Below, in pieces: positions 44,097 to 59,924 of a DNA stretch of 64,000 bases. The DNA is taken from IMG/VR virus record IMGVR_UViG_3300013005_000001, positions 62,001 through 126,000 of that record; one strand, given 5' to 3'. Position numbers and translations under genes: made by a program. The notes under the pieces were generated by a model. The model saw only the letters and a program-made list of their open reading frames with translations. It was not told where the DNA came from and ran no database searches. The stretch's first letter is position 1; each line of letters opens with the position of its first letter.

Positions 44097-44285
44097 TTTG
44101 GTACTCCTCTATGAGGTTGTTGATGTTAATAAGATATATAAAGATATATAGCTACAGGTGTTAAATGTAGATGATATCAGAAATATCTAAAGTTTTTCAG
44201 ATACCATCATTACAAGTCATATATATTATATAGTATTAAAAACCTCAAAGGTGTATAAAATAGGAGGTTTAACAAAAAATACGAT

Positions 44286-44468
44286 TTAGAAGACAATTCC
44301 CTTAGCTTCGCACAAGGCTGGAAGAGACTGAGACATGTTACTAAAAGCTTGAGACAGAGTGTCAAATCCTTCAGTTAAAGATCTTAAGTCCTTCACGTTT
44401 TCTTGTACGATAGGAACTGTAATTAAACAATCATAATATTTTGTATAGGTTTCGTGAAAGACTCTCAA
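44286..44468 (-). CDS. hypothetical protein (start likely further upstream)
   Basis: ORF track. Confidence 0.4.
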   Translation of the reverse strand: MRVFHETYTKYYDCLITVPIVQENVKDLRSLTEGFDTLSQAFSNMSQSLPALCEAKGIVF

Positions 44469-44679
44469 GTTCTCAAAGAACTGAGCCTCTAGTTCACCTA
44501 GTGATGTTTTTGGATTTTGTTTAGGAAGAATAATCTTACCCCTTTTTAAAATAAAATTGGTGGAAGACCAGCCCCCAGTAGCACAAAGGATTAGACTACT
44601 GAGGACTGGACTGAGTTAGCTGTAGACCAAGCTTGACTACCTAGTGGGAGCTAAATGTAAAGGAGGGTATATATCCAGC

Positions 44680-44970
44680 TCAGCTTGGATCTTGAAGCGT
44701 AACTTTTTCCACTTTTTTTAACTTACTATAATTTTCAATCATATCTAGGATATCATCAATTCTTTGAATGGACGATTGAATTCTAGTATGATCTTCTTTA
44801 GTTATAGTGTTGGTCAAATCAAGGTTTAGATAATTTCTTAGTGTAGACTGTTGAGATAACAGTGATTTGTTGAGAATTTCTAAGTTAGATTCATCGTCAA
44901 AAATCTCGCTAATTAGATTGTTCATTATATCTCTTTTCATGCCAAATCCGGCGATTAATTTTTTTTTCAA
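44680..44970 (-). CDS. hypothetical protein
   Basis: ORF track. Confidence 0.5.
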   Translation of the reverse strand: MKKKLIAGFGMKRDIMNNLISEIFDDESNLEILNKSLLSQQSTLRNYLNLDLTNTITKEDHTRIQSSIQRIDDILDMIENYSKLKKVEKVTLQDPS

Positions 44971-45414
44971 TTAGAACGGATCATCTGAATCATCAGTGAT
45001 AGTGGGAAAAGCTAGGATAGTCTTGTTAAGGTTATCCTTAGCTGGCTTTAACCGTGTGCTGTACCAGTCTAACTCGTGATCTAGGTAATTAGACAGGTTG
45101 TCACCTGATTGTAAGATCCAGTCTGCTGGAGCAAATGAGTTTGCAGCGTATAGAATATCTAACGCTAGGGCTCGCCAGTCTACGGCTGGCTCGCCGGCAA
45201 AATCATTAGTAAAGTCTTTTGATGAGGATGATGAAGATATATCTGGAGAAGTATAATACTTGTCATGCCAGGCTTCTATCTGTGAGTTTAGTTCTGGATT
45301 GCTAGTACGCAAGGGTGCGTGTTCGCAATGGCCGGAACAAAAACCATCTGAATAGAATCCTATAGCTACAAGTAGCTCATGAACATCATTAGGGGGATAA
45401 GGTTTATTGGACAT
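44971..45414 (-). CDS. hypothetical protein, acidic DDPF tail
   Basis: ORF track. Confidence 0.55.
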   Translation of the reverse strand: MSNKPYPPNDVHELLVAIGFYSDGFCSGHCEHAPLRTSNPELNSQIEAWHDKYYTSPDISSSSSSKDFTNDFAGEPAVDWRALALDILYAANSFAPADWILQSGDNLSNYLDHELDWYSTRLKPAKDNLNKTILAFPTITDDSDDPF

Positions 45415-45655
45415 GTTGGTAAGTTTCTGTGTGTAGTACGCCACGGATGGCGTAGGTGAATAGTGCTATTAGTGCTAGGGCTATAGAGGCTTGAATATAC
45501 ATGCCAGCTATCATAAGAGATATGACAAGGCCGGCAGAATAAAAGCTCTCTAATGCCCAATAGGATACTAATACTTTTCTAGGAGTATCTTTAGACTTAA
45601 TACGGTTAATAACCTTGGCTGTAGTACGGCCTATGTGCTTAAGTAGTCGTTTCAT
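45404..45655 (-). CDS. small membrane protein
   Basis: Two hydrophobic helices; GGAG RBS. Confidence 0.6.
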   Translation of the reverse strand: MKRLLKHIGRTTAKVINRIKSKDTPRKVLVSYWALESFYSAGLVISLMIAGMYIQASIALALIALFTYAIRGVLHTETYQHVQ

Positions 45656-46070
45656 AGATAGCTCCTATATCAGTGTTTTATCACATTGTATTCATAGCTT
45701 GATTAAGCATTTATAATACTTGTGTAGAGAGGGATTGTAGTGGTGGGTGGTGGGGACTAGTGGGGGATAGAGGGTAGGACTCATTTATAGGGTTGTATAG
45801 TTTATACAGGTTATATATGGGTACCCCTGCGCGAGGGTCTACCTTATGGGGTTTTATTAACAAAAAGGTTCAAGGATTGATCCTGTAGTTACCCTAAAGG
45901 TATACTGTCGCTATCCTATTTATGTATATACCATAGGTAAGTAAAGCATTATTTGATTGCGGCGATTCTCGCCCTAGAATTAAAAAATATAATATTTTAA
46001 CTAGGGACATACGAAAAGCCGGCGTAGGTAACCACTATACCTACAACCGGCTTCTCAGTCCGCATATGAC

Positions 46071-46286
46071 TCAAACAGGGAGATTTACATTGTACAATCT
46101 TTTAAAGTCTCGACGCATGGGATGCAGGGCTGATTCTGTTCCATGTGTCGTGTACATAGGGCCTTGGATTGTAGAGGGGGGAACAATCTTGTATACGCCC
46201 GACTTAGCTCTTTCAACTTGGAATCCTAACCGGATTAGCTCCGATAGGACTTTTTTCATCGTGGATGATTGGTGTTGCCGAGGCAT
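46071..46286 (-). CDS. HicA-like (dsRBD-fold) protein
   Basis: L..LGF.VE..KSG.YK...H pattern; GGAG RBS. Confidence 0.5.
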   Translation of the reverse strand: MPRQHQSSTMKKVLSELIRLGFQVERAKSGVYKIVPPSTIQGPMYTTHGTESALHPMRRDFKRLYNVNLPV

Positions 46287-46515
46287 GTCTATTATTTCTC
46301 CTTATATGAGTTGTCTGCTTAGACGATATAACTATATCAGTTGTATTCCTTGCGAGCAACTCGTAGGACAAATAATGACGGCTCGAATACCGCTTTTAAA
46401 ACAAGGTTTAAATTGCGGCGATTCTCGCCTTATAGAAAAAAATAAAAAGGCATGTTATATACCACAGGGGATACATAACAATGCCTAATTAGATTTTTGT
46501 AGATACGGTTAATTA

Positions 46516-46758
46516 TTAGTCTCCAAAAGGAGAATGTTCTTTAACGAAGAGGACTCGATTGCGTTGAATTGCTTTATCGAGACAATCGTCACAGATGATT
46601 GCTTGGTATTGATTACAGTCAAATACAGAACCATAACTACCATAGATGATTACATCTGATGCACTATCAAGGTTTGATGATTCACCTGCTAGTTCTTCTG
46701 GCCATAGGTGTATGACTGCTTTTTCACATATAAGGCATGGTGTGAGTTCTTGTCTCAT
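46516..46758 (-). CDS. small zinc-finger protein
   Basis: CLIC...ICDDC. Confidence 0.65.
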   Translation of the reverse strand: MRQELTPCLICEKAVIHLWPEELAGESSNLDSASDVIIYGSYGSVFDCNQYQAIICDDCLDKAIQRNRVLFVKEHSPFGD

Positions 46759-46958
46759 TGTTTTGCCTTTGCTGCGAGCTTACCAAGATGATCTATTGCT
46801 ACTTCTTTAGATGCTGGATCATTGGTAAGTAGGAGCTTGTGGATTTGATTGATGTACTGGTATAGTTTCTCTTGTGCTTCGCCATGAGTTTTGACTACTA
46901 GCCTGTATTGTTCAATTAATTCTTGTTGTTGTTGGATGATTTCTTCTAGTGTGGTCAT
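46755..46958 (-). CDS. hypothetical coiled-coil protein
   Basis: AAGGAG RBS. Confidence 0.6.
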   Translation of the reverse strand: MTTLEEIIQQQQELIEQYRLVVKTHGEAQEKLYQYINQIHKLLLTNDPASKEVAIDHLGKLAAKAKQ

Positions 46959-47415
46959 TAATATTCTCCTTTGTACGAATAAAAAATGTATTTTTATATA
47001 TGTTTATGCGACTTGGGACCATTTTTAGATCATGTCCAGGATCATTGCCAATTGCAACACTAAATTTAGTATATTGATAGAACATTCGTCAATGCATATA
47101 CTAGGCATGATAATTTTACGCAGGTTTTCTATCAATCCCGACACGTCACTTTACTTATAATTAAGAAGGACACGTGCAGCCCTTAGTACGCCTAAATGGA
47201 TTCGAACCATTATAATATTAAGTCTTTACTTTAACCAAGGTTCTTTTCGAGAACATTAATACCGATTACCTATCGACGTCTAGCCTTTTATATTGTCAAT
47301 GCTAAGGACAAGCTTTAAAAAAATACTAAGATTGTTTACAAACATCTTATGTAATTATAATAAATGTGCGTTTATTATACTGTATGCGCACCCCACAGTT
47401 GGTGGTTACCGAAGT

Positions 47416-48426
47416 TTAGAAGGGATCTTCTTCGGTTTCTGTTGCTCCAACGACAACTGAAGTCTGCTCAGCACGTGCCGAGTTACTCCAGAGATCGCAT
47501 GAAACGATTTCGCCTTGTACTGCAAGTGAGAAACGACCACAAGGGGCGTTTACTGGGTCATAGACATTCTGAGGTGTCTTTGAACCGTTCTTCTCAACCT
47601 TGATACGCTGTTGTGAGCCAGACCAGTTGGTGACCCATTGACGTGACAAGGCAAGAAGTTCCTTGCGCTTTTCTTCTGCTTCTTTGACTTTAGCTTGAGG
47701 AAGATCAGAAATCTTCTGGCCAAGTACATGTGCTTCAAGGCGAAGACCATAGACACGTTGGAACGTTTGAACAGAAGCGTCAACAAGGTTTAAGAAACCC
47801 TGATTGGTACGCGACTTTTCACGATCGGTTGTGCCAAGCTCGAAGCTGGTCATTGGAACACCTGTTTGATGTTGGTATGCAGCAACAATGCGACCAGGAT
47901 TCTCGATAGAACCTGTTACATCGATTGCACCAGCAGCTTTGAAAGCGTTGATGGCATGCTTGATACCTTCTTCGTTAGCACCGAACTGTTGGAAGAACAA
48001 CGGCATACCAGCAGAGTAGTTCATACCCATTGCTGTAAGGCTGTCTTCAAACTTCTGACGCTCAATGACGTTACCGCCATCTTGTGCAAATGCATGCAAA
48101 AGATCTACGATGCTCATTGAGTTACCGTCGATGTTGACGTTCAAATCAAGCTTGACTGGGTTCATTACACCAGTAACAAGCAGGTATTCCTTACCAGTGT
48201 ACGGTGACGACTGGCGAAGAACTGAAAGTCGGGACAAGTTAGCTTCACGAAGAGTAACTTCTGCAGGAACTTCAACGCCGTTAATCGAGCCAGTGAACTT
48301 GACTGTCTTGCCAACTACGAGGCTCTGTGTACGAGCAGTAGATTGCAAGTTGTCAATGTTCTCTGCGATTGCCGAGAAGAGGTCACCTGAGAGACCGAAC
48401 TTGTTGAGGATGGATGGATTGGACAT
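47416..48426 (-). CDS. hypothetical protein, apparently highly expressed, EEDPF tail
   Basis: Strong RBS, C-ending codon bias. Confidence 0.75.
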   Translation of the reverse strand: MSNPSILNKFGLSGDLFSAIAENIDNLQSTARTQSLVVGKTVKFTGSINGVEVPAEVTLREANLSRLSVLRQSSPYTGKEYLLVTGVMNPVKLDLNVNIDGNSMSIVDLLHAFAQDGGNVIERQKFEDSLTAMGMNYSAGMPLFFQQFGANEEGIKHAINAFKAAGAIDVTGSIENPGRIVAAYQHQTGVPMTSFELGTTDREKSRTNQGFLNLVDASVQTFQRVYGLRLEAHVLGQKISDLPQAKVKEAEEKRKELLALSRQWVTNWSGSQQRIKVEKNGSKTPQNVYDPVNAPCGRFSLAVQGEIVSCDLWSNSARAEQTSVVVGATETEEDPF

Positions 48427-48522
48427 GGATATCTCCTATGTGTTATAATTGTGATTAATTGTGAATAATTTTGAAAAAAGGTATATCTGAGGTATACCCT
48501 TCTTTTTGCTTATACCGCAGTG

Positions 48523-48765
48523 TTAGGCTGTGGCTGTATCTGAGTCAGAAGTATCTTCAACTTCAGCAGGACGAACCTCGCGATAACCTTCTGCAATTGC
48601 ACCGGTGATGCTACGTGTGAGATCACTGGTTTTAGAAGGTGTTACTTTGATTGCGTCTACCGTTTTACCGGTAATGCTGCTAGTTGCAGAGATAGTTTTT
48701 GCGGTTAATTTACCGAAAAGCTTAGCTGTTTTTTCTGCCATGGGTGTTTTTTCTGTTGTGAACAT
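48523..48765 (-). CDS. hypothetical protein
   Basis: AAGGA RBS. Confidence 0.6.
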   Translation of the reverse strand: MFTTEKTPMAEKTAKLFGKLTAKTISATSSITGKTVDAIKVTPSKTSDLTRSITGAIAEGYREVRPAEVEDTSDSDTATA

Positions 48766-49067
48766 GATTTTCCTTTTGTGTTTGTGATTATTGGGTGTCT
48801 GTGTTTGTTCCTGGAATTATGAATTCTAGGATGTCTGTGATGAAATCGAGTAACCAATCAAGCATTTGTTTTCTCCTTTCCCTTCTTTTTTGTGGTTGCT
48901 GTCTGAGGAAGCATTTTAGAAGCTAGAAAGAAAAAACAAATACAACGGTCAATCACGCCACCTTTGAGGTGTGTAATTGCCGTTGTTATTGCTCTTTTGA
49001 TTAACGATTATATAAATGGTTGCTAAGAATGCGTAATTGCATACAAAGCCAAGCATAAACATTGCCA

Positions 49068-49370
49068 TTATACTAAGTCCAACTCTACAAGTTGAGTATT
49101 TTTCTGGTACCATTCTACTAAAGTAGCAGATTGTCCGCGAAGACGACTGCTGTGTTCGTAGTTATAGCCGGCGTACTCCTTGAAGTACTCGGTTCCGTCC
49201 ATAAGTTGAATGCTTGTTTTATTGTTGAGCGTATGATCAATAATCATAAGCACTGGACAACCTACAAACATTCTGATATATGCTTGTCCACCATTATAAT
49301 GGTAGAGTCTGTCTTCTTTGGCAGCGATATCTATCATTTCTAACGATTGGATGTATGTAACTTTTTCCAT
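49068..49370 (-). CDS. hypothetical protein
   Basis: AAGGAG RBS before MEKVTY. Confidence 0.6.
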   Translation of the reverse strand: MEKVTYIQSLEMIDIAAKEDRLYHYNGGQAYIRMFVGCPVLMIIDHTLNNKTSIQLMDGTEYFKEYAGYNYEHSSRLRGQSATLVEWYQKNTQLVELDLV

Positions 49371-49465
49371 TTTATTTGCTCCTTGAGTTGTAAAGTGTTC
49401 GTGCTTTGTCGCCGGCGTATAGTCCGATGACAAAACACATTGTGGTGAATGCTACTGCAAGATGC

Positions 49466-49672
49466 TTACGCATTGGTTGCCTTCCTTTTTTGTTGTGCTA
49501 ATTTGTACAGATCATTCATTGCTTGACCGTTATTGTACGTATCACGCAGTTTTTCTTCTGCAGGTGTTAGCTTTTTGCTTTTTTCTTCTTCGCCTTTGAT
49601 CCAAATGACGAAGGCTATTCCGAGGTATACGCCAGCTGAAAGCCAACGCATACGATTGATTATTGTGGACAT
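49466..49672 (-). CDS. small membrane protein
   Basis: AAGGAGG RBS, TM helix. Confidence 0.6.
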   Translation of the reverse strand: MSTIINRMRWLSAGVYLGIAFVIWIKGEEEKSKKLTPAEEKLRDTYNNGQAMNDLYKLAQQKRKATNA

Positions 49673-50245
49673 GGTATTCTCCTCCTTATAAAGAGATTTA
49701 GTGGTTAGGGATAAAAATAATAACAAGACACACCAGTGTGGATAGCCGGTCTAACTTAAGGGAAAGAACCGACTATCCACAACCTGGGAGGTGTCATGCA
49801 GAGATAGAGAGCAGTTATTTGCAGTGTCGTACTCAGGACACTCTATGTAAGTCTGACAGAAGACTCAGTTTCGACTGTCAGCTAGGGACATAATCAATCC
49901 CTAAGACCTATCGCCAAGAACCAGTCTCGATGATTTCGAGAATGATTCCACGTGGCTCAATGAACAAGTCACCGGCCGGAGAAATCCAGCGAATGATATC
50001 TAAGTTAGAAACAATGCTATCTGCTTCTGCGAGACGGGTAACAGTGTCATTGATAAGTCGCTCAAGTTTGGTAATGGACATGGTATTCCTCCTTGGAATG
50101 TTTTGGGCTTACACCCTTCTTTTTTGATAGAATTCTCTTTTGTATGCACTAATTGAAGGACTAGTGAGAAAAAAGGGGAAAGTCCCAACAGACCCGCACT
50201 TGTGGTACGGATCTGCTGGGACAAGGAACAAGGGACAAGAGGCGG

Positions 50246-50665: not shown

Positions 50666-50817
50666 GATTGAGACCTCCTAATGGTCGTTATGGATGAGGT
50701 AATCACCCTTCTTTTTAGACAGAAAGTCCTAGTTTAGAAGGGTATCTTGGGCATGTTATAGATTAAACACGCACTAAAGAGGCTTTAGAAGCAATATAAT
50801 ATTTGCTCCTATCATCT

Positions 50818-53196
50818 CTAGATTGAGTTAAGTGCTCGGATAAGCCAATCAATTGGTTGATTAGGGCTCTTTGCACTGAACGTGTACAACCACTGGTCGT
50901 GATTGGCCTTTGGATACTGACGCTTGGCAATATACGAGTGATAAGCCAGTGACAGTATCTTACGGTTCATGTAGTCGACACCCTTGTCTGGGTTGTTGTC
51001 GATACGAGTGAACAGATCGCACAAGTAATCTACCCATGCTTCTGCGGTCATGATGCTACGCTTGACAGTGAGCTTTTGGTGTTCTTGAGCTGCCTTAAGC
51101 AATTCTTCTTCTGTCCATTCGATATTGAACAGCACCTCTGGCTCAACAAGAGTTGTATTGAGATGGTCTGACATTTGAGAAACAGTGGTCCGCACCAGCA
51201 TTTCTCGCATTATGTGCATCTGACACCAAGGTGACTCTTCAACTGTAGTAGTCTCAAGGTCCTTAGCATGTGCTTCTGGCATACGAGTTACCATCCAGAA
51301 CATATCCATCTTGGTACCGTTAAGCCCATTTGTTTCACGGATTTGGCGATACAGTTCACCAACCCATTGTGCAATGAGCTTTACGTCAGCAACAGTAGCG
51401 AGTCCCTGTTCGATGCCATCAATGATCTCTTCGTTGCGAGCGACAGGATTCTTGATGTATTCGTTGATCAGAGCATGCCAAAGAATCTTAGGCAATACTG
51501 CAGAACCAACTCCACCAGGGAATGCAAGTGCTACAAGTCGGCTACGTCCTTCATCACCCAGAGAATACTCAGGATTGATCTTTAGAGTAGAACTACCAGG
51601 AAGGGTTCCGGGAACAACCAAATTGTTCTCTTCCAAGTACGAAGATTGAGGAACAGCCATAAACAGCTCCTCATAATCGATGACAGGTGGAAATGCAGTA
51701 TACCGATGGAATACTGGACCATAGTTCTCGATTGGAATCATAGACCATTCACCAAAGTCATTTGGGTTACGGAGGATGAACGCCATGAGCTTGATGTCTC
51801 CATCAGCAAAACGCACTAGTCGAACATGGATCTTCCATGTATCGTCTAAGTCATCTCCACCATGGTTGATGTGATTCTTCTCGAAGTACTTACCAGGTAC
51901 CGCAAAGCAATGTGTCTTCTTGTGGTAGTAGCCACAGTCATTATACACATTCTTGAAACCAAAGATCTCAAGAGCTTCTTGTGTCATCACGTGAGTTGCA
52001 TAGGCCCATTCAACTGGAAACCAATGATACTGCTTATGACGCCATACATTACCAATGCCTTCGCCTTCTTCGTAAGCACCAAGGAATGACCTCTTTAAGC
52101 CATTGACCGTTAACCAGCGAAGAGTCTGAGTTGCATCAAATGGTATTCCAGCCTGATCAAGATCACGAACAGCCTTCTGCACAATCTCAAGCGTAGACAC
52201 AGGTCGACGGAATTCATCTTCCTCGTTATCTTGATACTGGGCAACTGCATTATTATTATCCACCAGGGTAGTCATGAACTTGAATTGCTTACCTTCTGCA
52301 AGGTCAACTTTTGCTTGTTCAAGGGCACCTACTAGACCACGAATGACATCTTCTTGAGTATACAGACCATTTACCTTCTGGTAGATGGCCATAGTAAGGT
52401 CATCACTCTTGACAGGAATAGCCGAATACGACGGTTCGATTGTAGCAAACTGCCAACCCTTAGTGCTGATCTCAGGCTTGATGTTGGGACCAAAGGTCTT
52501 GATATCGTACCCATCCATCATCTTATCTGGGAGGATTAGAGCATTGCCCTTGATCAACCCATCTTTCATGAGGACTCGGATCTGAACTACTGATGTTTGA
52601 CCATCAAGGATTAGTGCAATCTGTTTGTTGATCCATTCACGTGATGCACGATGGTTACTTACAACACAGCGTATAGCAAAGCTTTGGCTGATTGCGGAGA
52701 TTCCATCTACATCACTATCGATGTACCCAAGATCTAGGTGGTCGATAGTTTGAACCTTGATGTTGCCATCCGGATCATATGTCCACATGCATGACATGCG
52801 AACAATTTCTGCCAATCGCTTGCTCATCTTCTTTGAGTTCTTGATCACAAGACCAACCTCATCGAGTCCAGCAAGCCACGTTGTCGTACGTCCACGATGG
52901 GGCTTCACACCTTTAATCCGTACTGTGTACTGATCTGATGAGTTGCTCCAACGCAGGATTTCTGAATTGGCTAAAACTGGCAGTGCTGTAGGATCCTGTG
53001 AAGGAACCCCAGTGTGCCAGCTCTTGTTTATCTTTCGCACTTCGATCCGGTAATGATCCGGAAAGAATTGCTCCAGAAAGGCGGGCCAATAAGGACCACC
53101 ATCAAACTCCTCAAGAACTTTATCGTTCTCAAGGAGAGGGAGTGCAGTGATAAGCCGGAACCAGCCATCATTGCGTTTGACAATACCATGAAACAT
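50818..53196 (-). CDS. putative single-subunit two-barrel RNA polymerase (RdRP/YonO-like), paralog 2
   Basis: SKRL, DGISAIS, QIRVLMKDGLIKG, NIKPE, SDDLT, GGDDLDD, LRNPN. Confidence 0.62.
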   Translation of the reverse strand: MFHGIVKRNDGWFRLITALPLLENDKVLEEFDGGPYWPAFLEQFFPDHYRIEVRKINKSWHTGVPSQDPTALPVLANSEILRWSNSSDQYTVRIKGVKPHRGRTTTWLAGLDEVGLVIKNSKKMSKRLAEIVRMSCMWTYDPDGNIKVQTIDHLDLGYIDSDVDGISAISQSFAIRCVVSNHRASREWINKQIALILDGQTSVVQIRVLMKDGLIKGNALILPDKMMDGYDIKTFGPNIKPEISTKGWQFATIEPSYSAIPVKSDDLTMAIYQKVNGLYTQEDVIRGLVGALEQAKVDLAEGKQFKFMTTLVDNNNAVAQYQDNEEDEFRRPVSTLEIVQKAVRDLDQAGIPFDATQTLRWLTVNGLKRSFLGAYEEGEGIGNVWRHKQYHWFPVEWAYATHVMTQEALEIFGFKNVYNDCGYYHKKTHCFAVPGKYFEKNHINHGGDDLDDTWKIHVRLVRFADGDIKLMAFILRNPNDFGEWSMIPIENYGPVFHRYTAFPPVIDYEELFMAVPQSSYLEENNLVVPGTLPGSSTLKINPEYSLGDEGRSRLVALAFPGGVGSAVLPKILWHALINEYIKNPVARNEEIIDGIEQGLATVADVKLIAQWVGELYRQIRETNGLNGTKMDMFWMVTRMPEAHAKDLETTTVEESPWCQMHIMREMLVRTTVSQMSDHLNTTLVEPEVLFNIEWTEEELLKAAQEHQKLTVKRSIMTAEAWVDYLCDLFTRIDNNPDKGVDYMNRKILSLAYHSYIAKRQYPKANHDQWLYTFSAKSPNQPIDWLIRALNSI

Positions 53197-53364
53197 GATA
53201 TCCTCGCTTTCTGTTGAATTGGAGGCTTCAACATAGCCTTTTGTTTTAGTGGATAGGTTCTAGGTTTATGGCCTGTAGTCTATCCATAAAGAGAAAACCC
53301 CTTTCGGGGTCTCCTCCTTCTTCTAACAGAATGCTGTTAGGTATAGTCCCGTTGGATCCAACGA

Positions 53365-53808
53365 CTAGAGGATGTCTCCATCTTCTTCGCCGTTGAACTC
53401 TTCGAGGAGCTTCCGCAGTTCCTCTGAGATGCCCATCGATGATCCGATGACGTCCAGAGTTCCTCCGTTAGCCCAGCATGAAGCCTTGAAGCCTGTAACG
53501 GCGACACCATCTTTGGTGACGAAGTTATTTGGCTTGATGTCGGTCAATGTGAACTCGTCACACTTTACGACCAGCTTCAACCCAGCTGCCTTTGCTGCTG
53601 CAAAAGACGCTGCCACGGTTGCAACCTTTTCAGGGAAGATTGTCATCTCCACTTTGAGGTTGGCCAACATGTCCGCAGAGACTCCCTTTGCAGAGAGTAC
53701 ATCCTTGGCAATCCCAATCAAGACGGTCCAGAACATAGTTCCGTCCTTCTTTGAGTAGGCACGTGGTGCTGTGTTGACGTACAAGTACGCCTGCTTTTCT
53801 ACTGACAT
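53365..53808 (-). CDS. paralog family A protein, copy 2
   Basis: VNTAP...KKDGTMFWTVLIG...EEDGDIL. Confidence 0.75.
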   Translation of the reverse strand: MSVEKQAYLYVNTAPRAYSKKDGTMFWTVLIGIAKDVLSAKGVSADMLANLKVEMTIFPEKVATVAASFAAAKAAGLKLVVKCDEFTLTDIKPNNFVTKDGVAVTGFKASCWANGGTLDVIGSSMGISEELRKLLEEFNGEEDGDIL

Positions 53809-54058
53809 GACAACCTCCAAGTTGTATGTAGAGGTGAATATTATTGTTTTAACACGATGTACTCACATCACCGTGCCCACACTTTAGTTATCACATCTCT
53901 CAATATGATCTGGTAGTAAGCACCAGGTTCCTCCTGTAGTTTCGGCTCAGGCCCCTAGGGTATGATCTAGGATCTACCCATAAAAGAAAAACCCCCCGAA
54001 GGGAGTTCTTCTTCTCTTCCAACAGAACGCTGCTGGGCATGGTCAGGTCGAATACCGA

Positions 54059-54325
54059 CTAGTGGCGGATAAGCACCACGTATGTCATCATCTTTGTGTT
54101 AACCCACTTGCCGTCGGTCCACGCAGAGGTGTATTTAACCCTGGTTGGTCGCTTTTCAGCAATGTTTCTGTTGTTCACAAGGAACAATTCTGCATCTGCT
54201 TGCTGGCTGAACCAGTAGATGGTGTATCCCTCATAGGACCTTGCGGTTGCGAAACCACCAGTGCCTGTCAGGAAAATGTCAGAGTTAAGGAACTCCGACC
54301 CATCATTTTTACTGAATTGGGGCAT
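54059..54325 (-). CDS. hypothetical protein
   Basis: AGGAGGAG RBS. Confidence 0.6.
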   Translation of the reverse strand: MPQFSKNDGSEFLNSDIFLTGTGGFATARSYEGYTIYWFSQQADAELFLVNNRNIAEKRPTRVKYTSAWTDGKWVNTKMMTYVVLIRH

Positions 54326-54566
54326 GACTCCTCCTAAAGTGTCATGTTGCATATGCACACCACGTGCATACGACTAACTATTTACTCGTTGACCTGGAGC
54401 TGCTAAGCCACAGGACCAGCATTAAATACTGGGTGGATATAGATCTAGGACCTACCCATAAAAAAAAGATTTAAGCCCTAGGTATAGGGTCACGTCCCAA
54501 TGTTTTAGAGATAGTTGTACTAGTGGTAGTTTTATTATTTAATAATATGATCCATGTCATGACGCA

Positions 54567-54812
54567 TCACTCCTCGATCTGATCGAAGAGACTTGGCTGG
54601 TGGAACCATGGGCAGACAGGAGTTGGCTGACCTTTTCTGTCATGCATATAGATGAACTGATGACACGCCCGGCACAAAACCATCTTATAAGGATGCCTTG
54701 ATGTGAACGTGTCATACTGGTAATCATCCAGTCCATGGGTACGACATTCATCGCATTGTTTGTAACCGCTGTATTCCCAACGACGGTTGCTTTTCTTTTT
54801 GTTGTATGACAT
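54567..54812 (-). CDS. small zinc-finger protein
   Basis: CDEC...CRAC; AAGGAG RBS. Confidence 0.55.
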   Translation of the reverse strand: MSYNKKKSNRRWEYSGYKQCDECRTHGLDDYQYDTFTSRHPYKMVLCRACHQFIYMHDRKGQPTPVCPWFHQPSLFDQIEE

Positions 54813-54850
54813 TTCTGTCTCCTTTTTGTTGTTGTTGTTTTTCATGTTAA

Positions 54851-56707
54851 TTACGCCCACCCTGCAATTTCTACGCTGAGTTTATCTTTCAAGAACTTAA
54901 TGATTGGCTTGCGTGTTTCCTCGGCAAGAGGCTGATTGTGCTTACCAAGAAGCTGAGTCATTGTGCCTTGAACCTCACCATTAAGTATTTGTAATGGCGT
55001 AGAACTCCTTCTTACTTCTGCGTGCCCAATCCAATTGCCTTCAACATCTTTGAAACCAATGATGATTGTCTGACCGTCGTAAACACGATCTGCGTAAGAG
55101 CCAATGCAATTGTTTTGAGTAGCTCCCCATTCAACAAGGTCATGCGTCATCTTAGGAACAATCATTTGAATCCCTTCTGCAATCCACTTTCCATCAAATT
55201 CTGCAAATGCTCTTAGGTAAGGAGTGTTTCGCAGCTTCTTGTTTTCTGTCTTGATCTTGTTGTACTCTGCAGTAACAAAGTCATGGATTTGTTCAACATT
55301 CATCCTTGATCGTGCTACGTGCTGCTTAATTGCAGTTCTGTGGTTACGGCCCTTGATTTGTGTAAACATGTGTGCTGCATCAACAGCGTGCTGCCCATTT
55401 AAATACAAATGACCAGGATCTTTGTCAGATGTAAACATTTGCAAGAGATATTCATCCTTATAACCAAAGTCCCGAAAGAATGCCTTAAAACGTTTTCTCA
55501 TTAAAGGACTTGAGTTATAGCGCATGTAGTGACACACTACGTCAAGATCTAACTTCTCTAGCACTTGAGGATTGAACCCACGGGCAATGATCAACAGGTT
55601 AATAGCTCCACGAAGATGATGGAGCGTATTGATCTTGTTTATGTCACCAAAGATCTTCTTAGTTACTCCGTGCGGATGCATGAAAGCCTTATTCAAGATT
55701 TTCTTAGTTGATGTCTCTCCACCAATCCAATAGATGTCAGATTGAGTAATTCCATTTGGGTACAGCCCTGCACACGTACCACCATACTCAGTTGGCATGT
55801 ACTTGAGGATTTTCAATACATCCTCTTCCTTAATCAACTGATCACGCAAACCAAGCACTGTCAGTTCGATTGTGTCATCCAGTGGAACCAATTTCTTTCT
55901 TGCCATCTGGCCGTAAATAAGACCCCAGATCGGTGTGCCTGTCTTTTTGTTCTTCCACATGAGACGGTACCCATTGTTGGTTTTGTTCATGAATAGAACT
56001 CCAGGCCACTTCTTTTGGTAGTGCTGACCCCTGGTGTTAATAGTTGCTGTTTTGAATTCAACAATCCAACCAGCTTTTTCACCAGGCATTTCCGAAACGT
56101 ACATCTCATTGATAGAGACGTAATCAAACAACTTGTGTTCCTCATATTCATCTCCATATGTTTGTTCAAATTTCAAGGCTCGTTTGGTGCGTTCCCCTTT
56201 GTTAACAACTCGAGTTGAGTATGCGCACAATGGAGAGAAGTTGTCTTCGCCGGAACCCAACAGTCCCAACTTTTCTACCTTCTCATTGAACTTTTTAATG
56301 GCATTTCTTGCATCCAAGTAGTTGTCATTAATAAGAGCCAATGACTCTATTACTTCAATCTTGGATTGGAACTCTTGCATTGAACTACCAGCTCGTGGGA
56401 AGGAACGATCATTGCCCACCATGGTCATAACACTTAAATGATGATCAATCTCAGCTCTACTCATTACTTGTTGGATCTGAGTGATATCAAGTATGGCTTT
56501 TGCCAAGTCCATTGAATTCATTTCTGCTGGATCCATGTTTGCAAACCAGATGTTATATTGCTCTAGCGTGCCTTTCTTTGTTTGAATTGTGAGCTTCATG
56601 GGCTCTACCTCTTTCTGTATAGGGAATGGGTTTTTCTCCTGCGGAAGCAGGATTGGTGGTTGTGGATAGTGGGTGGATGGGACATCAGTTTGCTCGAAAC
56701 TGCTCAT
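54851..56707 (-). CDS. PcfJ-like domain protein
   Basis: C-terminal VPK...DLVEWG..QNNCIGSY...V..G...I...Q..G.HN; alternative start at 56599. Confidence 0.8.
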   Translation of the reverse strand: MSSFEQTDVPSTHYPQPPILLPQEKNPFPIQKEVEPMKLTIQTKKGTLEQYNIWFANMDPAEMNSMDLAKAILDITQIQQVMSRAEIDHHLSVMTMVGNDRSFPRAGSSMQEFQSKIEVIESLALINDNYLDARNAIKKFNEKVEKLGLLGSGEDNFSPLCAYSTRVVNKGERTKRALKFEQTYGDEYEEHKLFDYVSINEMYVSEMPGEKAGWIVEFKTATINTRGQHYQKKWPGVLFMNKTNNGYRLMWKNKKTGTPIWGLIYGQMARKKLVPLDDTIELTVLGLRDQLIKEEDVLKILKYMPTEYGGTCAGLYPNGITQSDIYWIGGETSTKKILNKAFMHPHGVTKKIFGDINKINTLHHLRGAINLLIIARGFNPQVLEKLDLDVVCHYMRYNSSPLMRKRFKAFFRDFGYKDEYLLQMFTSDKDPGHLYLNGQHAVDAAHMFTQIKGRNHRTAIKQHVARSRMNVEQIHDFVTAEYNKIKTENKKLRNTPYLRAFAEFDGKWIAEGIQMIVPKMTHDLVEWGATQNNCIGSYADRVYDGQTIIIGFKDVEGNWIGHAEVRRSSTPLQILNGEVQGTMTQLLGKHNQPLAEETRKPIIKFLKDKLSVEIAGWA

Positions 56708-56829
56708 GGTTACCTCCATGTTGGGACCTGGCGAAGGTCTTGGTTCTAGCCATAAAAGAAAAACCCCCCGAAGGGAGTTCTTCTTCTCTTCCAACAGAAC
56801 GCTGCTGGGATGGTCAGGTTAAATACCGA

Positions 56830-57276
56830 CTAGAGGATGTCACCATCTTCTTCGTCATTGTACTCATCAAGAAGCTTCCGGAGCTCCTCTGAAACGCCCA
56901 TGGATGAACCAAGAACGTCAAGAGTCTTTTCTCCATTAGCCCAGCACGAAGCTGCAAAGCCATTAACCGCAACACCATTGTTATTGGTGTAGTTGTTTGG
57001 CTTTACTTCTGTAAGAGTGAAATCTTCACACTTCAGAACCAGCTTCAACCCAGCTGCTTTTGCCTTAGCAAATGCATTAGCCATCAATTCGAGCTTGTCG
57101 GGAAAGACTGTCATCTTTACCTTGAGCGTCTTGGCTTGTGCCTCGGAAACTCCCTTTGCAGAGAGCAAGTCCGGGGTAAGCCCAATGAGGACAGTCCAGA
57201 AAACTGTTCCATCCCCCTTGTTGTTAGGCGCTGGTGCTGTGTTGACGTACAGGTACGTCTTTTTTGTTTCTGACAT
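56830..57276 (-). CDS. paralog family A protein, copy 3
   Basis: Clearly similar to copy 2, same upstream TTGGAGGTTGTC RBS. Confidence 0.75.
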   Translation of the reverse strand: MSETKKTYLYVNTAPAPNNKGDGTVFWTVLIGLTPDLLSAKGVSEAQAKTLKVKMTVFPDKLELMANAFAKAKAAGLKLVLKCEDFTLTEVKPNNYTNNNGVAVNGFAASCWANGEKTLDVLGSSMGVSEELRKLLDEYNDEEDGDIL

Positions 57277-57493
57277 GACAACCTCCAAGTTGTATGTAAG
57301 ATGCGGATGTACAGAATGCACATACGACTACTATTTACTCGTTACAGGAGCTGTTAAGCCACTGTTGACCACACCAAAAGGTGCTGAGGTTGTAATCTAG
57401 TTACTACCCATAAAAGAAAAACCACACTGGATGTGTGGCTCTTCTTGACCGTTATAAATGCATAGGTGGTCAACCTTGGTCATGAGTTAAAAC

Positions 57494-57706
57494 TCAATTG
57501 TTTTGCAAGTCTGCAATCTGCTCACGGGTGAATGTGTCAAACACCCACCGGATTGCCTTGCGGGAACATTTTTCATAGCTCCACTTGTGCTTGGGGTCAC
57601 TTTGGATTTTGTCTGCAATCTTGATGATTGCCAAGCCGAGCTCAAGCCCGTATTGACGACAAATCCTTTCTTGTACTTGAGTTTCCTCAAATTGGGACTG
57701 GGACAT
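57494..57706 (-). CDS. hypothetical protein
   Basis: AAGGAG RBS in cassette. Confidence 0.6.
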   Translation of the reverse strand: MSQSQFEETQVQERICRQYGLELGLAIIKIADKIQSDPKHKWSYEKCSRKAIRWVFDTFTREQIADLQNN

Positions 57707-57819
57707 GGATTTCTCCTTTTGTTGGGCCCAAGCTTCATGCCTGGGGACTACCCATAAAAAAAAGATTTTGATATTATAGATATAGTTATAGGATTAAAGG
57801 CTAGTGTCACCCACATCAC

Positions 57820-58251
57820 CTACTGCCAAACCTTTGCATCGATTACATTCAACCCAAGGCTTTTCATCATCTCCAGGTTAGGATCTTCGTCATCCATAGC
57901 CCATTGCAGGTCATATTTCTTCAAAAGCATCTTGATCATGTGCTCTTTGTATTTCCTGCTACTAATTCCATTCCACTTATTAGGCCTGTGCCAGATCGAA
58001 TCAACCAAATGGTCAATCTCTAATTCCCGCAACTTCTTCCAAGTATTTGCCTTGCAACTTTGCCCTCTTGCAGTTAAGAACACAAGTTCATAACCCATCA
58101 ATTTAAAGGCTTTAAGCATAGCTATACCTCCATCTAGACCATTTGCATTTAGCGTTTCTTGAACCCACTGGTCATCACGCTCTGGTGACCAGTTTGGTGT
58201 GACACTCACAAGAGTGCCGTCGATGTCCACAAGGACAGCTTTTGGTTTCAT
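57820..58251 (-). CDS. HAD-family phosphatase (polynucleotide 3'-phosphatase-like)
   Basis: DIDGTL, LTARG, K, MDDED motifs. Confidence 0.8.
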   Translation of the reverse strand: MKPKAVLVDIDGTLVSVTPNWSPERDDQWVQETLNANGLDGGIAMLKAFKLMGYELVFLTARGQSCKANTWKKLRELEIDHLVDSIWHRPNKWNGISSRKYKEHMIKMLLKKYDLQWAMDDEDPNLEMMKSLGLNVIDAKVWQ

Positions 58252-58375
58252 GATTTTCTCCAATCACTAGGGTCTAGACTTGGTGCCTAGAAACTACCCA
58301 TAAAAGAAAAACTCCCCTAAGGGAGTCCTTCTTCTCTTCTAACAGAACGCTGTTAGGTATTGTCAATCAGTTGGA

Positions 58376-58702
58376 TTAGCTGTTAGGGCACTTACCCTCT
58401 ATGAGGAAGCGTTTGCTCCTCATGCATCCGTATTCCTCAACACGAGCCACTACCTTGTTGTAGTGAATCTTGTCTCCCGGCACACGTATGTATGCCTTGT
58501 TCATCAGTGCTCCAATGAGACGACCAACACCCCATGCGATGTCGCTCGCTTCATCTTTGAACTCTGCCATGCTCTTTGCTTCAAAAAGTTCGTAGATTTC
58601 TCCACGACGCTTTCCTTCCACAAGATCACGACTGAACAAGTCAGCAATGCCCTCCTTGAACGTGTGCACTTTCATGCATCCGCACCAATTTGTTGTTTCC
58701 AT
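58376..58702 (-). CDS. hypothetical protein, weak MazG-like acidic motif
   Basis: E..E...DEASD. Confidence 0.5.
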   Translation of the reverse strand: METTNWCGCMKVHTFKEGIADLFSRDLVEGKRRGEIYELFEAKSMAEFKDEASDIAWGVGRLIGALMNKAYIRVPGDKIHYNKVVARVEEYGCMRSKRFLIEGKCPNS

Positions 58703-58790
58703 TGTTACCTTTCTAAGCAGGGATCTCAACCCTACTCATAAAAAGAAAACGGCCCTATCTCCCGACAGTACCGTTCCCTTTTCCAACCAC

Positions 58791-59141
58791 TTAGTAGTCG
58801 CGCTGGTTGAAGACGCAATCTCCAGTAAATGGCCTATCACCGGTATTGTATTTACCATCTCGATGTTCAGTCATTACTAAAGGTTTTGTACCTTCAGACA
58901 GAATTTCCTTAATGTACTTTTCTAGCTGTTGGTACTGCTTCTCGTAGGATTGCTCATTACCAACCTGACTGTGACACTCAATGTTCTCAAGCATGTTGAC
59001 AATGGTCTTTTCAACATCTGCATAAACATCGGTGATGTCATAGCCCCAGAAAGCCCAGTAATTGACGTATGCACGCCCCTCACTGGTGTGACCCAGTATG
59101 ATGTTGATCATCGTAATGATGATTTCCTTTGGAATGAACAT
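58791..59141 (-). CDS. hypothetical protein
   Basis: GGAGG RBS in cassette. Confidence 0.6.
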   Translation of the reverse strand: MFIPKEIIITMINIILGHTSEGRAYVNYWAFWGYDITDVYADVEKTIVNMLENIECHSQVGNEQSYEKQYQQLEKYIKEILSEGTKPLVMTEHRDGKYNTGDRPFTGDCVFNQRDY

Positions 59142-59277
59142 GTTTTACCTCCATGTTCTAATGCCCACACCACGTTGGTGTAGGACTTGGTAGCTTTCAG
59201 ACTACCCATAAAGGAAAAACCACCCTGGATGGGTGGTATCCTTCAGGTTTACTTGATTCAACCTTGTTGCTACAGTT

Positions 59278-59769
59278 TTACTTGTGAGCTTTGTGTGCCT
59301 TTGCTGGGTAACTACCCCAGTTTGCGTTGCGGACGTGATCCCAGGTGCAGTGACGAGAACTGCAGACGCTGCACTTTGGATGCGTTGCGCCGTTTCTCAC
59401 TTTCTTCACTTGGACTCTTTTTGCGTCCGCCTTTTCCATTTCTTCCTGAAGAAGATACATCTCATCGAGCTTGGTGTTTGCTTCGATGTACTCTTTGCGG
59501 GCAGTGCCCAGAGAGATGTAGTAGTCCAGTTTGTCTGAGCAGAACCAGCAGTAGCCCTCGTTGTGACCACTTGTGTCCCACTCAGTGCTTCCGCACGCTT
59601 TGCACGGTGAGCATTCCTGAACTTCTTCTTCCTTGACACTCTTCAGTTCGTTGATGGTTTCCTTGATGGATTCCTTGACGAAGTGCTTGATTGCCCTTTG
59701 CTGGAAGTTGATCACCAGATTGGAGACGAAGATCGCCACCAGACTGAGAATCAAGAAAAGATCTGCCAT
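59278..59769 (-). CDS. membrane-anchored protein with CxxC zinc fingers
   Basis: N-terminal TM, CKAC, CWFC, CSVC. Confidence 0.6.
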   Translation of the reverse strand: MADLFLILSLVAIFVSNLVINFQQRAIKHFVKESIKETINELKSVKEEEVQECSPCKACGSTEWDTSGHNEGYCWFCSDKLDYYISLGTARKEYIEANTKLDEMYLLQEEMEKADAKRVQVKKVRNGATHPKCSVCSSRHCTWDHVRNANWGSYPAKAHKAHK

Positions 59770-59924
59770 AACAGATTCCTCCTTTTTTTGTGCCCACACC
59801 CCAATGGTGTAGGACTTGGCAGCTTTCAAACTACCCATAAAAGAAAAACTACACTGGATGTGTAGCATTCTTTTGAACCGTTATAATAATATGTATAGGT
59901 GGTTAACCTTGGTCATACTTCTCG

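What the first reader, a model, noticed from the sequence alone, without database searches (positions are those of the whole stretch)
50818..53196. Second paralogous polymerase (GGDDLDD...LRNPN) inside the cassette region
Seen: the same motif series as 36479-39019 (SKRL, DGISAIS, QIR...GLIKG, SDD, GGxDxDD, RxPN.xGE) despite low overall similarity, and its gene has the repeated motif 85 nt upstream (53280). Inference: two divergent RNAPs may drive successive temporal gene classes with different promoter motifs.
Basis: partly seen in the sequence, partly recalled or inferred. Interest (0 to 1): 0.8.

Follow-up and report, generated by a model that had tools for sequence, protein, structure and literature searches.

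The report
Paired two-barrel phage RNA polymerases
This gene encodes one of two anciently duplicated, so far unannotated single-subunit RNA polymerases of an uncultured lake phage of about 200 kb. It sits exactly where one conserved promoter-like DNA motif gives way to another, which points to a polymerase-driven cascade of gene expression.

Summary
ORF 50818-53196 (-) encodes 792 aa and ORF 36479-39019 (-) encodes 846 aa. They are true but very distant homologues (BLASTP E 3e-8; profile-profile E 4e-28 over 607 columns). Neither matches Pfam, PHROGs, PDB sequences or any GenBank phage.

Confident AlphaFold models (pLDDT 89 and 85) find as best PDB neighbours only two-barrel RNA polymerases: QDE-1 for the 792-aa protein, and Thermus phage gp64/gp62 for the 846-aa protein. 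The catalytic loop reads HGGxDxDD. Distant members of the same superfamily carry the canonical DxDGD at that place.

The hairpin-TTTTTCTTTTATGGGTAG unit (20 copies, 53280-63773) ends at this gene. The second class is not GGCGAG (two copies) but AAAAAGAAGGG. That motif has six exact intergenic copies between the two polymerase genes, the last 28 nt before the 846-aa gene.

In five related genomes, 31 of 33 copies of this second motif lie downstream of the 792-aa orthologue on the gene strand, starting 104-253 nt after its stop codon.

Best reading: an early-expressed polymerase that switches on the next gene class, as in phage P23-45 or T7. No activity or transcription start site was measured here.

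The parts
50818..53196 (-). Gene for the 792-aa two-barrel RNA polymerase homologue ('RNAP-792'), the subject of the finding
   Evidence: Intact ORF. 120 full-length unnamed homologues in metagenomes. AF2 model pLDDT 89.3, pTM 0.87. Foldseek best PDB hits are QDE-1 (E 1.7e-6, prob 1.0), then the gp64 phage RNAP and RDR2; the remaining hits are DPBB proteins.
51841..51864 (-). Codons for HGGDDLDD (residues 445-452), the predicted metal-binding loop of barrel DPBB-A. D449, D451 and D452 are invariant.
   Evidence: Translation. Invariant in 28 family members and in 122 superfamily members. Distant members have HGGWDQDGD / HDTWDQDGD at this place. The loop is followed by a beta strand, as in beta' and QDE-1.
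51745..51771 (-). Codons for RNPNDFGEW (residues 476-484). The R-x-P here is 100% invariant in the superfamily and lies 24-26 residues after the Asp triad.
   Evidence: Its spatial role is not determined.
52015..52029 (-). Codons for YHWFP (residues 390-394), the position of the canonical 'Pro-gate' R-x-P loop. The Pro is kept; the Arg is replaced by Trp392.
   Evidence: The superfamily alignment places P394 with P376 of the paralogue's N-R-I-P. Pro-gate definition taken from PMC9508822.
52543..52560 (-). Codons for GLIKGN (residues 213-218), the conserved Lys216 of barrel DPBB-B
   Evidence: K216 is 100% and K240 98% conserved. The 24-residue spacing K216-K240 equals that of K743-K767 in QDE-1.
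36479..39019 (-). Gene for the 846-aa paralogue ('RNAP-846')
   Evidence: AF2 model pLDDT 84.9. Foldseek best hits are P74 gp62 and the gp64 RNA polymerase, E 1.6e-5 to 7e-5, prob 1.0. It keeps N-R374-I-P376 and HGGHDQDD.
53280..53322 (-). Motif-1 unit in front of the gene: hairpin GACCCCGAAAGGGGT, T-rich tract, then TATGGATAG (degenerate copy)
53280..63799 (-). Block of small genes, each flanked by a motif-1 unit (terminator-like hairpin + TTTTTCTTTTATGGGTAG); 20 copies
   Evidence: Terminator-like sites: 32 found against 11.3 +/- 3.0 expected. Sigma-70-like sites are not enriched: 17 against 21.9.
50706..50716 (-). First copy of motif 2 (AAAAAGAAGGG on the gene strand), beginning 102 nt after the polymerase stop codon and 41 nt before the next gene
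39047..50124 (-). Five further exact motif-2 copies at 50114, 48880, 48497, 41966 and 39047 (the motif is the 11 nt starting at each coordinate). All are intergenic and in gene orientation. The last ends 28 nt before the ATG of RNAP-846.
   Evidence: None is found elsewhere in the window on this strand at 0 mismatches.

Best explanation
RNAP-792 is a catalytically competent, single-subunit, two-barrel (QDE-1 / phage gp64-like) DNA-dependent RNA polymerase of an uncultured freshwater phage of roughly 170-210 kb.

Shown:
- It is a distant paralogue of the 846-aa protein.
- It is predicted with high confidence to have the two-barrel polymerase fold.
- It keeps every residue that is invariant in its superfamily, including an Asp triad in the variant form DxDD.
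- Its gene is the last gene of a block whose genes each carry a hairpin + TTTTATGGGTAG unit.
- A different motif, AAA(A/T)AGAAGGG, starts about 100-250 nt after its stop codon in five genomes.

Inferred:
- The gene is expressed with the early (motif-1) class.
- Its product then initiates at the motif-2 sites and so switches on the next class of about 12 kb. That class ends with, and includes, the gene for RNAP-846.
- RNAP-846 would in turn serve a later class, or be packaged.

This is the logic of T7 gene 1 and of the P23-45 vRNAP -> gp64 relay.
For: Homology and fold.

Active site:
- D449/D451/D452, K216, K240, R476/P478 and D593 are 98-100% conserved over 122 diverse members.
- 119 of 120 members of the 792 family carry the loop motif.
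- Canonical DxDGD is found at this place in distant members.

Genomic logic:
- Motif 1 occurs only at 53280-63773.
- Motif 2 occurs only at 39047-50716, with 6 exact 11-mers, all intergenic and co-oriented.
- In the window plus L002, L004, L005 and L006, motif 2 has 31 copies downstream of the orthologue, 1 upstream, 0 inside and 1 on the other strand.
- Motif 1 appears in lineage-specific variants upstream in L002, L004 and L006.
- Both paralogues lie about 12 kb apart on the same strand of the same contig in a relative.
- Sigma-70-like sites are not enriched in either block.

Precedent: P23-45 has two paralogous two-barrel RNAPs with two distinct motifs, and the second polymerase gene lies inside the first class (PMC10770324).
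Against: - No enzymatic or transcript-start data. Four lake metatranscriptomes hold only the 139-aa gene downstream, and their contig ends (50673, 50673, 50713, 50759) do not define a start at motif 2.
- The triad is DxDD rather than DxDxD.
- The Pro-gate Arg, which reads the ribose 2'-OH in QDE-1, Pol II and E. coli RNAP, is Trp in this family.
- TM-scores to solved RNAPs are low (0.24-0.37) and no residue-level superposition was available.
- The assignment of motif 2 to RNAP-792 rather than RNAP-846 rests on gene position only.
- Relatives exist in which the 792-like module is fused to a PIF1-type helicase, which could point to a role at replication forks.
- No third motif was found for RNAP-846.
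Confidence: 0.5

Rival explanations
1. Self-class reading. Each polymerase reads the motif that precedes its own gene: RNAP-792 reads hairpin-TATGGGTAG units and RNAP-846 reads AAAAAGAAGGG. At least RNAP-792 would then have to enter the cell with the DNA as a virion protein to start the cycle.
For: Each polymerase gene is the last gene of a block and carries that block's motif just upstream (84 nt and 28 nt). Phage-specific, near-identical 12-19-nt motifs in the first block with no sigma-70-like enrichment suggest a phage enzyme acts from the start of infection. Virion RNAPs are known in N4, crAss-like phages and P23-45.
Against: Known virion two-barrel RNAPs are very large or fused to virion proteins. 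RNAP-792 is 792 aa and lies among small early-type genes with no structural genes nearby. The copy of motif 1 before its gene is the weakest of the 20. Motif 2 begins directly after the gene in all five genomes, which fits product-then-target order.
Confidence: 0.17
2. Replication enzyme. The two-barrel module is a helicase-coupled primase or other replicative nucleotide polymerase rather than a transcriptase, and the motifs are read by another enzyme.
For: Close relatives (E down to 1e-290) have the module fused behind PIF1-like helicase, NADAR, SLOG/DprA-like and DUF4326 domains. RNAP-846 sits two genes from an SF2 DNA helicase, in conserved synteny. SSB-like small proteins flank RNAP-792. 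Loss of the ribose-sensing Arg in the 792 family. PolD shows that two-barrel enzymes can make DNA (PMC10770324).
Against: All solved neighbours are RNA polymerases. The switch of promoter-like motifs at the gene has no explanation under this reading. QDE-1 itself works with a RecQ helicase and RPA while making RNA (background knowledge). The helicase fusions also carry counter-defence-type domains, so they need not mark replication.
Confidence: 0.12
3. RNA-templated or aberrant-RNA polymerase, as QDE-1 and the RDRs are, acting in phage-host conflict rather than in programmed transcription.
For: QDE-1 is the best structural neighbour of RNAP-792. Fusion partners NADAR, SLOG and DUF4326 are conflict-type domains.
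Against: Conserved position between two promoter-like classes. Two paralogues conserved together across a deep phage lineage. Phage homologues with known function (gp64, gp96, gp66, YonO) are all DNA-dependent transcriptases.
Confidence: 0.06
4. Inactive relic: a pseudo-polymerase kept for a structural or regulatory role.
For: Non-canonical DxDD and W-x-P.
Against: The three Asp, the barrel Lys residues and R476/P478 are invariant across a superfamily whose members share as little as 16-36% identity. The same DxDD is found in both paralogues and in most of 260 clusters.
Confidence: 0.03

Closest known systems
Thermus phage P23-45 / P74-26 RNA polymerases (gp64/gp62 non-virion RNAP and the RNAP domain of tape-measure protein gp96); Chaban et al. 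2024, PMC10770324
   Same: Single-subunit two-barrel RNAPs. Two deeply diverged paralogues in one phage. Two distinct DNA motifs in successive gene blocks. The second polymerase gene lies inside the block served by the first motif. gp62/gp64 are the best PDB neighbours of RNAP-846 (E 1.6e-5) and among the best of RNAP-792.
   Different: No sequence or profile similarity (hhalign probability 0.1%). Here both enzymes are about 800 aa free-standing proteins and neither is fused to a virion protein. The triad is DxDD rather than DYDGD/DFDGD. The 792 family lacks the Pro-gate Arg. The genome is about 200 kb, from lake water, with actinobacterial hints rather than Thermus. The published survey filter [RK]xPx{20,100}DxDxD would not retrieve either protein.
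Neurospora QDE-1 and eukaryotic RDR polymerases (Pfam PF05183)
   Same: Best structural match of RNAP-792 (Foldseek E 1.7e-6, prob 1.0). Order DPBB-B ... DPBB-A. GG immediately before the acidic loop. Lys-Lys spacing in the first barrel.
   Different: No Pfam hit; 10-11% identity; TM 0.37. QDE-1 is a dimeric RNA/DNA-dependent enzyme of RNA silencing with DYDGD and R962-S-P964. No slab/head/C-tail equivalents were examined here.
crAss-like phage phi14:2 gp66 and Bacillus SPbeta YonO
   Same: Phage-encoded single-chain two-barrel DNA-dependent RNAPs that read phage-specific promoters without sigma factors.
   Different: gp66 is a 2,180-residue virion-packaged protein with DFDxD. YonO has DxDGD and is a late-gene enzyme of a temperate phage. 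Neither appeared among sequence or fold hits here.
T7 gene 1 and N4 RNAPII logic (right-hand single-subunit RNAPs)
   Same: A polymerase gene placed at the end of, or within, the early block and followed directly by the promoters it serves; a relay of gene classes.
   Different: Unrelated fold; no Pfam RNA_pol hit. The analogy concerns genome organisation only.

Membership tests
Two-barrel (double-psi beta-barrel) RNA polymerase superfamily | Two DPBB domains in one chain or pair of subunits, in the order DPBB-B, connector/clamp, DPBB-A | tested here: met
   The AF2 models (pLDDT 89 and 85) show two strand-rich modules (203-263 and 394-489 in RNAP-792) separated by a helical connector. Foldseek returns only two-barrel RNAPs at E<1e-3, followed by isolated DPBB proteins.
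Two-barrel (double-psi beta-barrel) RNA polymerase superfamily | Metal-binding Asp triad DxDxD (usually DxDGD) in DPBB-A | tested here: inconclusive
   Three invariant Asp are present, but as D449-x-D451-D452 (DxDD). Distant members found with the family profile carry DQDGD / DSDGD at this place, so DxDD looks like DxDGD minus the Gly. No superposition on a solved active site was possible.
Two-barrel (double-psi beta-barrel) RNA polymerase superfamily | Pro-gate loop R-x-P about 30-60 residues before the triad (Rpb1 R446/P448, beta' R425/P427, QDE-1 R962/P964) | tested here: not met
   RNAP-792 has W392-F-P394: the Pro is kept (90% of the superfamily) and the Arg is replaced. RNAP-846 has the canonical N-R374-I-P376. 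Across 122 members the counts are 37 WxP, 34 RxP, 15 FxP (definitions). A second, invariant R476-x-P478 follows the triad; its role is unknown.
Two-barrel (double-psi beta-barrel) RNA polymerase superfamily | Conserved basic residues and a fourth Asp in DPBB-B (Rpb2 K979/K987/D837; QDE-1 K743/K767/D709) | tested here: inconclusive
   R207, K216, K240 and D164 are 94-100% conserved, with spacing like QDE-1 (K216-K240 = 24 = K743-K767). Equivalence is inferred from spacing only.
Two-barrel (double-psi beta-barrel) RNA polymerase superfamily | Template-dependent RNA synthesis | not testable with these tools
   Needs purified protein.
Eukaryotic-type RdRP (Pfam PF05183; QDE-1/RDR) | Match to the family profile | tested here: not met
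   No Pfam family at E<=1 for either protein. No PDB sequence hit with the protein or its profile.
P23-45 gp64-type non-virion RNAP | Detectable sequence or profile relationship to gp64 | tested here: not met
   hhalign of A1 against gp64: probability 0.1%. Structural similarity only: E 0.03 for RNAP-792 and 1.6e-5 for RNAP-846.
Virion-packaged phage RNAPs (N4 vRNAP, crAss gp66, P23-45 gp96) | Giant protein or fusion to a virion protein, encoded with structural or late genes, found in particles | tested here: not met
   792 aa, free-standing, among small cassette genes; no structural-protein hits nearby. Presence in particles cannot be tested here.
T7-like right-hand single-subunit RNAP (Pfam PF00940) | Match to the family profile | tested here: not met
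   No Pfam or PHROG hit.

The most novel reading that the evidence does not exclude
The DxDD triad together with loss of the ribose-sensing Pro-gate Arg (Trp392) and recurrent fusion to PIF1-type helicases could mark a change of chemistry in the 792 clade. It would then be a helicase-coupled two-barrel primase or dNTP-using polymerase, that is, a phage replicative enzyme of the RNAP/PolD fold, while the 846 paralogue remains the transcriptase.
Probability: 0.08. Interest if true: 0.9.

Novelty: new variant of a known kind. Interest (0 to 1): 0.62.

Why it matters
Single-subunit two-barrel RNA polymerases are the minimal relatives of the cellular transcription enzyme. Only a handful have been studied (YonO, crAss gp66, P23-45 gp64/gp96, QDE-1).

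This window contains two members of a large superfamily: 260 clusters at 50% identity, none of them named in the sources searched. Pfam, PHROGs, PDB sequence searches and the motif filter of the latest survey all miss it, because its catalytic loop is DxDD rather than DxDxD.

The conserved layout (motif-1 block, polymerase gene, motif-2 block, second polymerase gene) gives two candidate enzyme-promoter pairs of about 800 aa and about 11-19 bp. These can be tested directly in vitro. They would be of interest as orthogonal transcription parts, and for asking how promoter recognition and sugar selection work without a sigma factor or the canonical Pro-gate Arg.

Tried and rejected
- **Sequence annotation found nothing.** Pfam and PHROGs gave no hit, apart from a chance thymidylate-synthase match at E 0.048. 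PDB sequence and profile searches were empty. tblastn against 50,697 GenBank phages was empty for both proteins. The ESM-Atlas feature search gave only noise for RNAP-792.
- **Comparison with gp64.** hhalign of the family against P23-45 gp64 showed no signal.
- **GGCGAG as a promoter class: rejected.** The extended pattern is not enriched (27 found against 31 expected). There are two real copies in the window and one in a relative.
- **Host sigma-70 promoters as an explanation for either block: not supported.** Counts were 17 against 21.9 and 70 against 73.8 expected.
- **A third motif after the RNAP-846 gene.** K-mer counts and inspection gave only weak AT-rich candidates such as A[TC]ACAAA[AG]; nothing is claimed.
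- **Transcript starts from public RNA runs.** Only assembled contigs were available. They covered only the 139-aa gene and their ends were inconsistent.
- **Host from genomes.** The 792 family has no relative in 185,579 species genomes. The 846 family hit two MAG contigs of discordant taxonomy, probably mis-binned phage.
- **RNPN motif.** I considered that it might equal the 'SPANGEP' segment after the triad of E. coli beta'. The spacing is similar, but the intervening structure is helix in beta' and hairpin here, so I dropped the idea.
- **A further superfamily clade.** One more clade was examined (P0261), but its contig was too short to be informative.
Full report
**The observation**

The window carries an intact 792-aa ORF at 50818-53196 on the minus strand and an 846-aa ORF at 36479-39019 on the same strand. 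BLASTP aligns two colinear segments (E 3e-8 and 7e-6, 25-34% identity).

I collected 120 homologues of the first protein and 246 of the second. All are unnamed proteins from metagenomes. I aligned 28 and 24 of them (A1; A2) and compared the two profiles. hhalign gives 99.8% probability, E 4.4e-28, over 607 columns. The two proteins are therefore real, distant paralogues.

Both families occur on the same contigs: longest contigs of 171,677, 196,284 and 41,991 bp are shared between the hit lists. In one relative the two genes lie 12.4 kb apart on the same strand, compared with 11.8 kb here. In a tree of 122 superfamily members the two families fall in separate deep clades, each with 100% SH-aLRT support. 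The duplication is therefore old.

**What the proteins are**

Sequence libraries say nothing:
- no Pfam or PHROG family;
- no PDB sequence or profile hit;
- no tblastn hit in 50,697 GenBank phage records.

Structure prediction with the family alignments gave confident models: pLDDT 89.3 / pTM 0.87 for RNAP-792 and 84.9 / 0.82 for RNAP-846.

Foldseek against the PDB gave the following for RNAP-792:
- the only hits below E 1e-3 are four QDE-1 chains (E 1.7e-6 to 4.3e-6, probability 1.0);
- next come the Thermus-phage gp64 RNA polymerase, Arabidopsis RDR2 and P74 gp62;
- after these come isolated double-psi beta-barrel proteins.

For RNAP-846 the only significant hits are P74 gp62 and the gp64 polymerase (E 1.6e-5 to 7.4e-5). 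TM-scores are low (0.24-0.39), as expected for multi-domain proteins with different domain poses. I had no residue-level superposition.

In BFVD the two best hits are uncharacterised proteins of uncultured Caudovirales, followed by P23-45 gp64.

**The active site**

- Across 122 diverse members of the HMM-defined superfamily (260 clusters at E<=1e-3), D449, D451, D452, K216, R476, P478 and D593 are 100% conserved. K123/K126/R127, D164-G165, K240 and G564 are 97-100% conserved.
- The acidic loop reads HGGxDxDD in both paralogues and in most clusters. Several distant members carry HGGWDQDGD, HDTWDQDGD or HDGMDSDGD at the same place. DxDD is thus best read as the canonical DxDGD with the Gly deleted.
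- As in E. coli beta' and gp64 (sequences read), the loop is followed directly by a beta strand.
- In the first barrel, K216 and K240 are 24 residues apart, like K743 and K767 of QDE-1. R207 and D164 are plausible counterparts of the Q736/R738 position and of D709. This is inferred from spacing only.
- The canonical Pro-gate loop R-x-P lies upstream of the triad and contacts the ribose 2'-OH in QDE-1, Pol II and E. coli RNAP. It is intact in RNAP-846 (N-R374-I-P376). In RNAP-792 it reads W392-F-P394. Across the superfamily the Pro is kept in 90% of members, while the first position is W in 37, R in 34 and F in 15.
- A second R-x-P (R476-N-P478), 24-26 residues after the triad, is invariant. 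Its role is unknown.
- 119 of 120 members of the 792 family keep the acidic loop, which argues against a dead enzyme.

**The surroundings**

All genes from about 64 kb down to about 8 kb run on the minus strand. Between 53280 and 63773 there are 20 copies of a unit that reads, on the gene strand, as a variable GC-rich hairpin followed by TTTTTCTTTTATGGGTAG. There are none elsewhere.

Terminator-like sites are three-fold enriched in this block (32 against 11.3 +/- 3.0), whereas sigma-70-like sites are not (17 against 21.9). G+C is also higher here: 0.42-0.47 against 0.30-0.41 elsewhere. The copy 84 nt before the RNAP-792 start codon is the last and the most degenerate (TTTATGGATAG).

Directly after the gene a different motif appears: AAAAAGAAGGG. 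It has six exact copies at 50706, 50114, 48880, 48497, 41966 and 39047. All are intergenic, all are in gene orientation, and they lie roughly 14-70 nt before a start codon that has its own Shine-Dalgarno sequence. The last copy is 28 nt before the ATG of RNAP-846. Beyond the RNAP-846 gene, which is followed by a strong terminator-like hairpin, the motif does not recur.

**Is the layout conserved?**

I fetched the loci of four orthologues with 36-61% identity. The pattern A[AT]AGAAGGG occurs 31 times downstream of the orthologue on the gene strand, once upstream, never inside the gene and once on the other strand. In every genome the first copy lies 104-253 nt after the stop codon.

Upstream, each lineage has its own version of the hairpin/T-tract unit:
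- YTTTATGGGTAG, 19 copies, in L002;
- CTTTTAnnGATAG in L004;
- TTTTTTGAGGCTAG in L006;
- a different repeat in L005.

The polymerase gene therefore marks a conserved boundary between two motif classes.

**Mechanism**

The most economical reading is a relay. RNAP-792 is made with the first class and then initiates at motif 2. Motif 2 drives the next ~12 kb and, at its end, RNAP-846.

This mirrors P23-45. There a virion RNAP reads an AT-rich motif in a pre-early block that contains gene 64, and gp64 then reads a second, GC-rich motif (PMC10770324). It also mirrors the position of T7 gene 1.

What reads motif 1, and what RNAP-846 reads, remain open. I found no convincing third motif.

The alternative is that each enzyme reads the motif preceding its own gene and is delivered in the virion. 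This cannot be excluded, but it fits the small size and the gene neighbourhood less well.

Public lake-water metatranscriptomes show that the phage is present in RNA libraries. The 139-aa gene just after the first motif-2 copy is the only part of a 5.9-kb stretch assembled in four RNA libraries. The contig ends do not define a start site.

**A caution**

Some close relatives of RNAP-792 are C-terminal modules of 1.2-2.1-kaa proteins. The N-terminal parts of these proteins carry PIF1-like helicase, NADAR, SLOG/DprA-like and DUF4326 domains. Combined with the missing Pro-gate Arg, this keeps open a helicase-coupled, possibly replication-linked role. I rate it low, because it leaves the motif switch unexplained.

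**Novelty**

Phages with two paralogous two-barrel RNAPs and two promoter motifs are known (P23-45). What is new here is:
- a large, unannotated sequence superfamily with a DxDD catalytic loop;
- a clade lacking the Pro-gate Arg;
- a conserved two-polymerase layout in phages of about 170-210 kb from lakes (contig sizes).

Host hints are actinobacterial: an Rpf-type transglycosylase at 42488-43363 and WhiB in a relative. The survey of viruses with two or more RNAPs in PMC10770324 filtered on [RK]xPx{20,100}DxDxD, and neither protein matches that pattern. I found no paper describing this family in the library searched.

Noticed in passing
window 50246-50665 (-), 53365-53820 (-), 56830-57321 (-): Three paralogous small proteins (139, 151, 163 aa) with acidic C-terminal tips (…DDDGDDVLA, …EEDGDIL), reminiscent of SSB tails. 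One lies on each side of the polymerase gene, and similar 137-144-aa genes flank the orthologues in relatives. The 139-aa gene is the only part of 50200-56100 assembled in four lake metatranscriptomes. The Atlas feature search hits DUF3577 and DUF3127 clusters, which are leads only.
   Followed up: partly
window 54851-56794 (-): A 647-aa protein with a C-terminal PcfJ-like domain (PF14284, E 2.4e-10), encoded just upstream of the polymerase. The same arrangement is found in L001/L002 and L006. Function unknown.
   Followed up: partly
window ~50000-64000 versus the rest: A step in G+C content: 0.42-0.47 in the cassette block against 0.30-0.41 elsewhere. It coincides with the motif-1 block.
   Followed up: no
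window 45956-45986 and 46412-46442: Two copies of a T-rich tract followed by GGCGAGAATCGCCGCAAT. GGCGA-GAA-TCGCC can form a 5-bp/3-nt hairpin. One copy also occurs in L001/L002 at 17894. The T-tract + TA + GGNNAG outline resembles motif 1.
   Followed up: partly
window 59151-59221, 59780-59850, 60254-60324, 60999-61069, 62863-62933, 63310-63380, 63716-63773: A subset of cassettes shares a longer conserved stretch downstream of GGGTAG on the gene strand (…GGGTAGTCTGAAAGCTACCAAGTCCTACACCAACGTGGTGTGGGC…), including a hairpin. This may be a common structured 5' leader. No Rfam family matches it.
   Followed up: no
window 61138-61381 and 61447-61690; 53362-53830 and 56827-57298: Recent duplications inside the cassette block: 244 nt at 86% identity, and three adjoining repeat segments (99, 199 and 158 nt) at 83%, 72% and 78% identity. 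The cassettes appear to turn over by duplication.
   Followed up: no
window 18157-19773, 20159-20908, 20919-22571 (all -): AAA+ ATPase, ThiF/E1-like and JAB-domain proteins in a row, next to a 622-aa protein without hits. This looks like a ubiquitin-like conjugation/deconjugation gene set in a phage.
   Followed up: no
window 42488-43363 (-); L005 21659-21922 and L008 6127-6390: An Rpf-type transglycosylase (PF06737) plus SLT domain in the window, and a WhiB-family gene in a relative. Both are hints of an actinobacterial host. RNA and DNA runs holding the sequence are lake-water samples.
   Followed up: partly
L008 9360-9900 (upstream of the RNAP-846 orthologue): An array of about 10 alternating short repeats (AATGAATCA … ACTTGTATCA/TAGTAACA) at roughly 20-nt spacing, iteron-like, followed by AAAGAAAAAAAGGG about 35 nt before the start codon. 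No such array is present at this place in the window.
   Followed up: no
P0241, P0242, P0243, P0247, P0253 (relatives, not in the window): The 792-like polymerase module occurs as the C-terminal part of 1,191-2,126-aa proteins. Their N-terminal parts carry PIF1-like helicase, NADAR, SLOG/DprA-like and DUF4326 domains.
   Followed up: partly
window 3363-3438, 10604-10676, 27690-27764, 28689-28762, 30733-30806, 31368-31452 (all -): Six tRNA genes (Gly-tcc, Arg-tct, Met, Lys-ttt, Asn, Leu-taa), all in the gene orientation.
   Followed up: no
window 32269-35543 (-): An S8 subtilase-like protease (508 aa) next to an SF2 DNA helicase (557 aa), two genes downstream of RNAP-846. The same order (polymerase, two small genes plus one short ORF, helicase, S8 peptidase) is found in L008.
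   Followed up: partly
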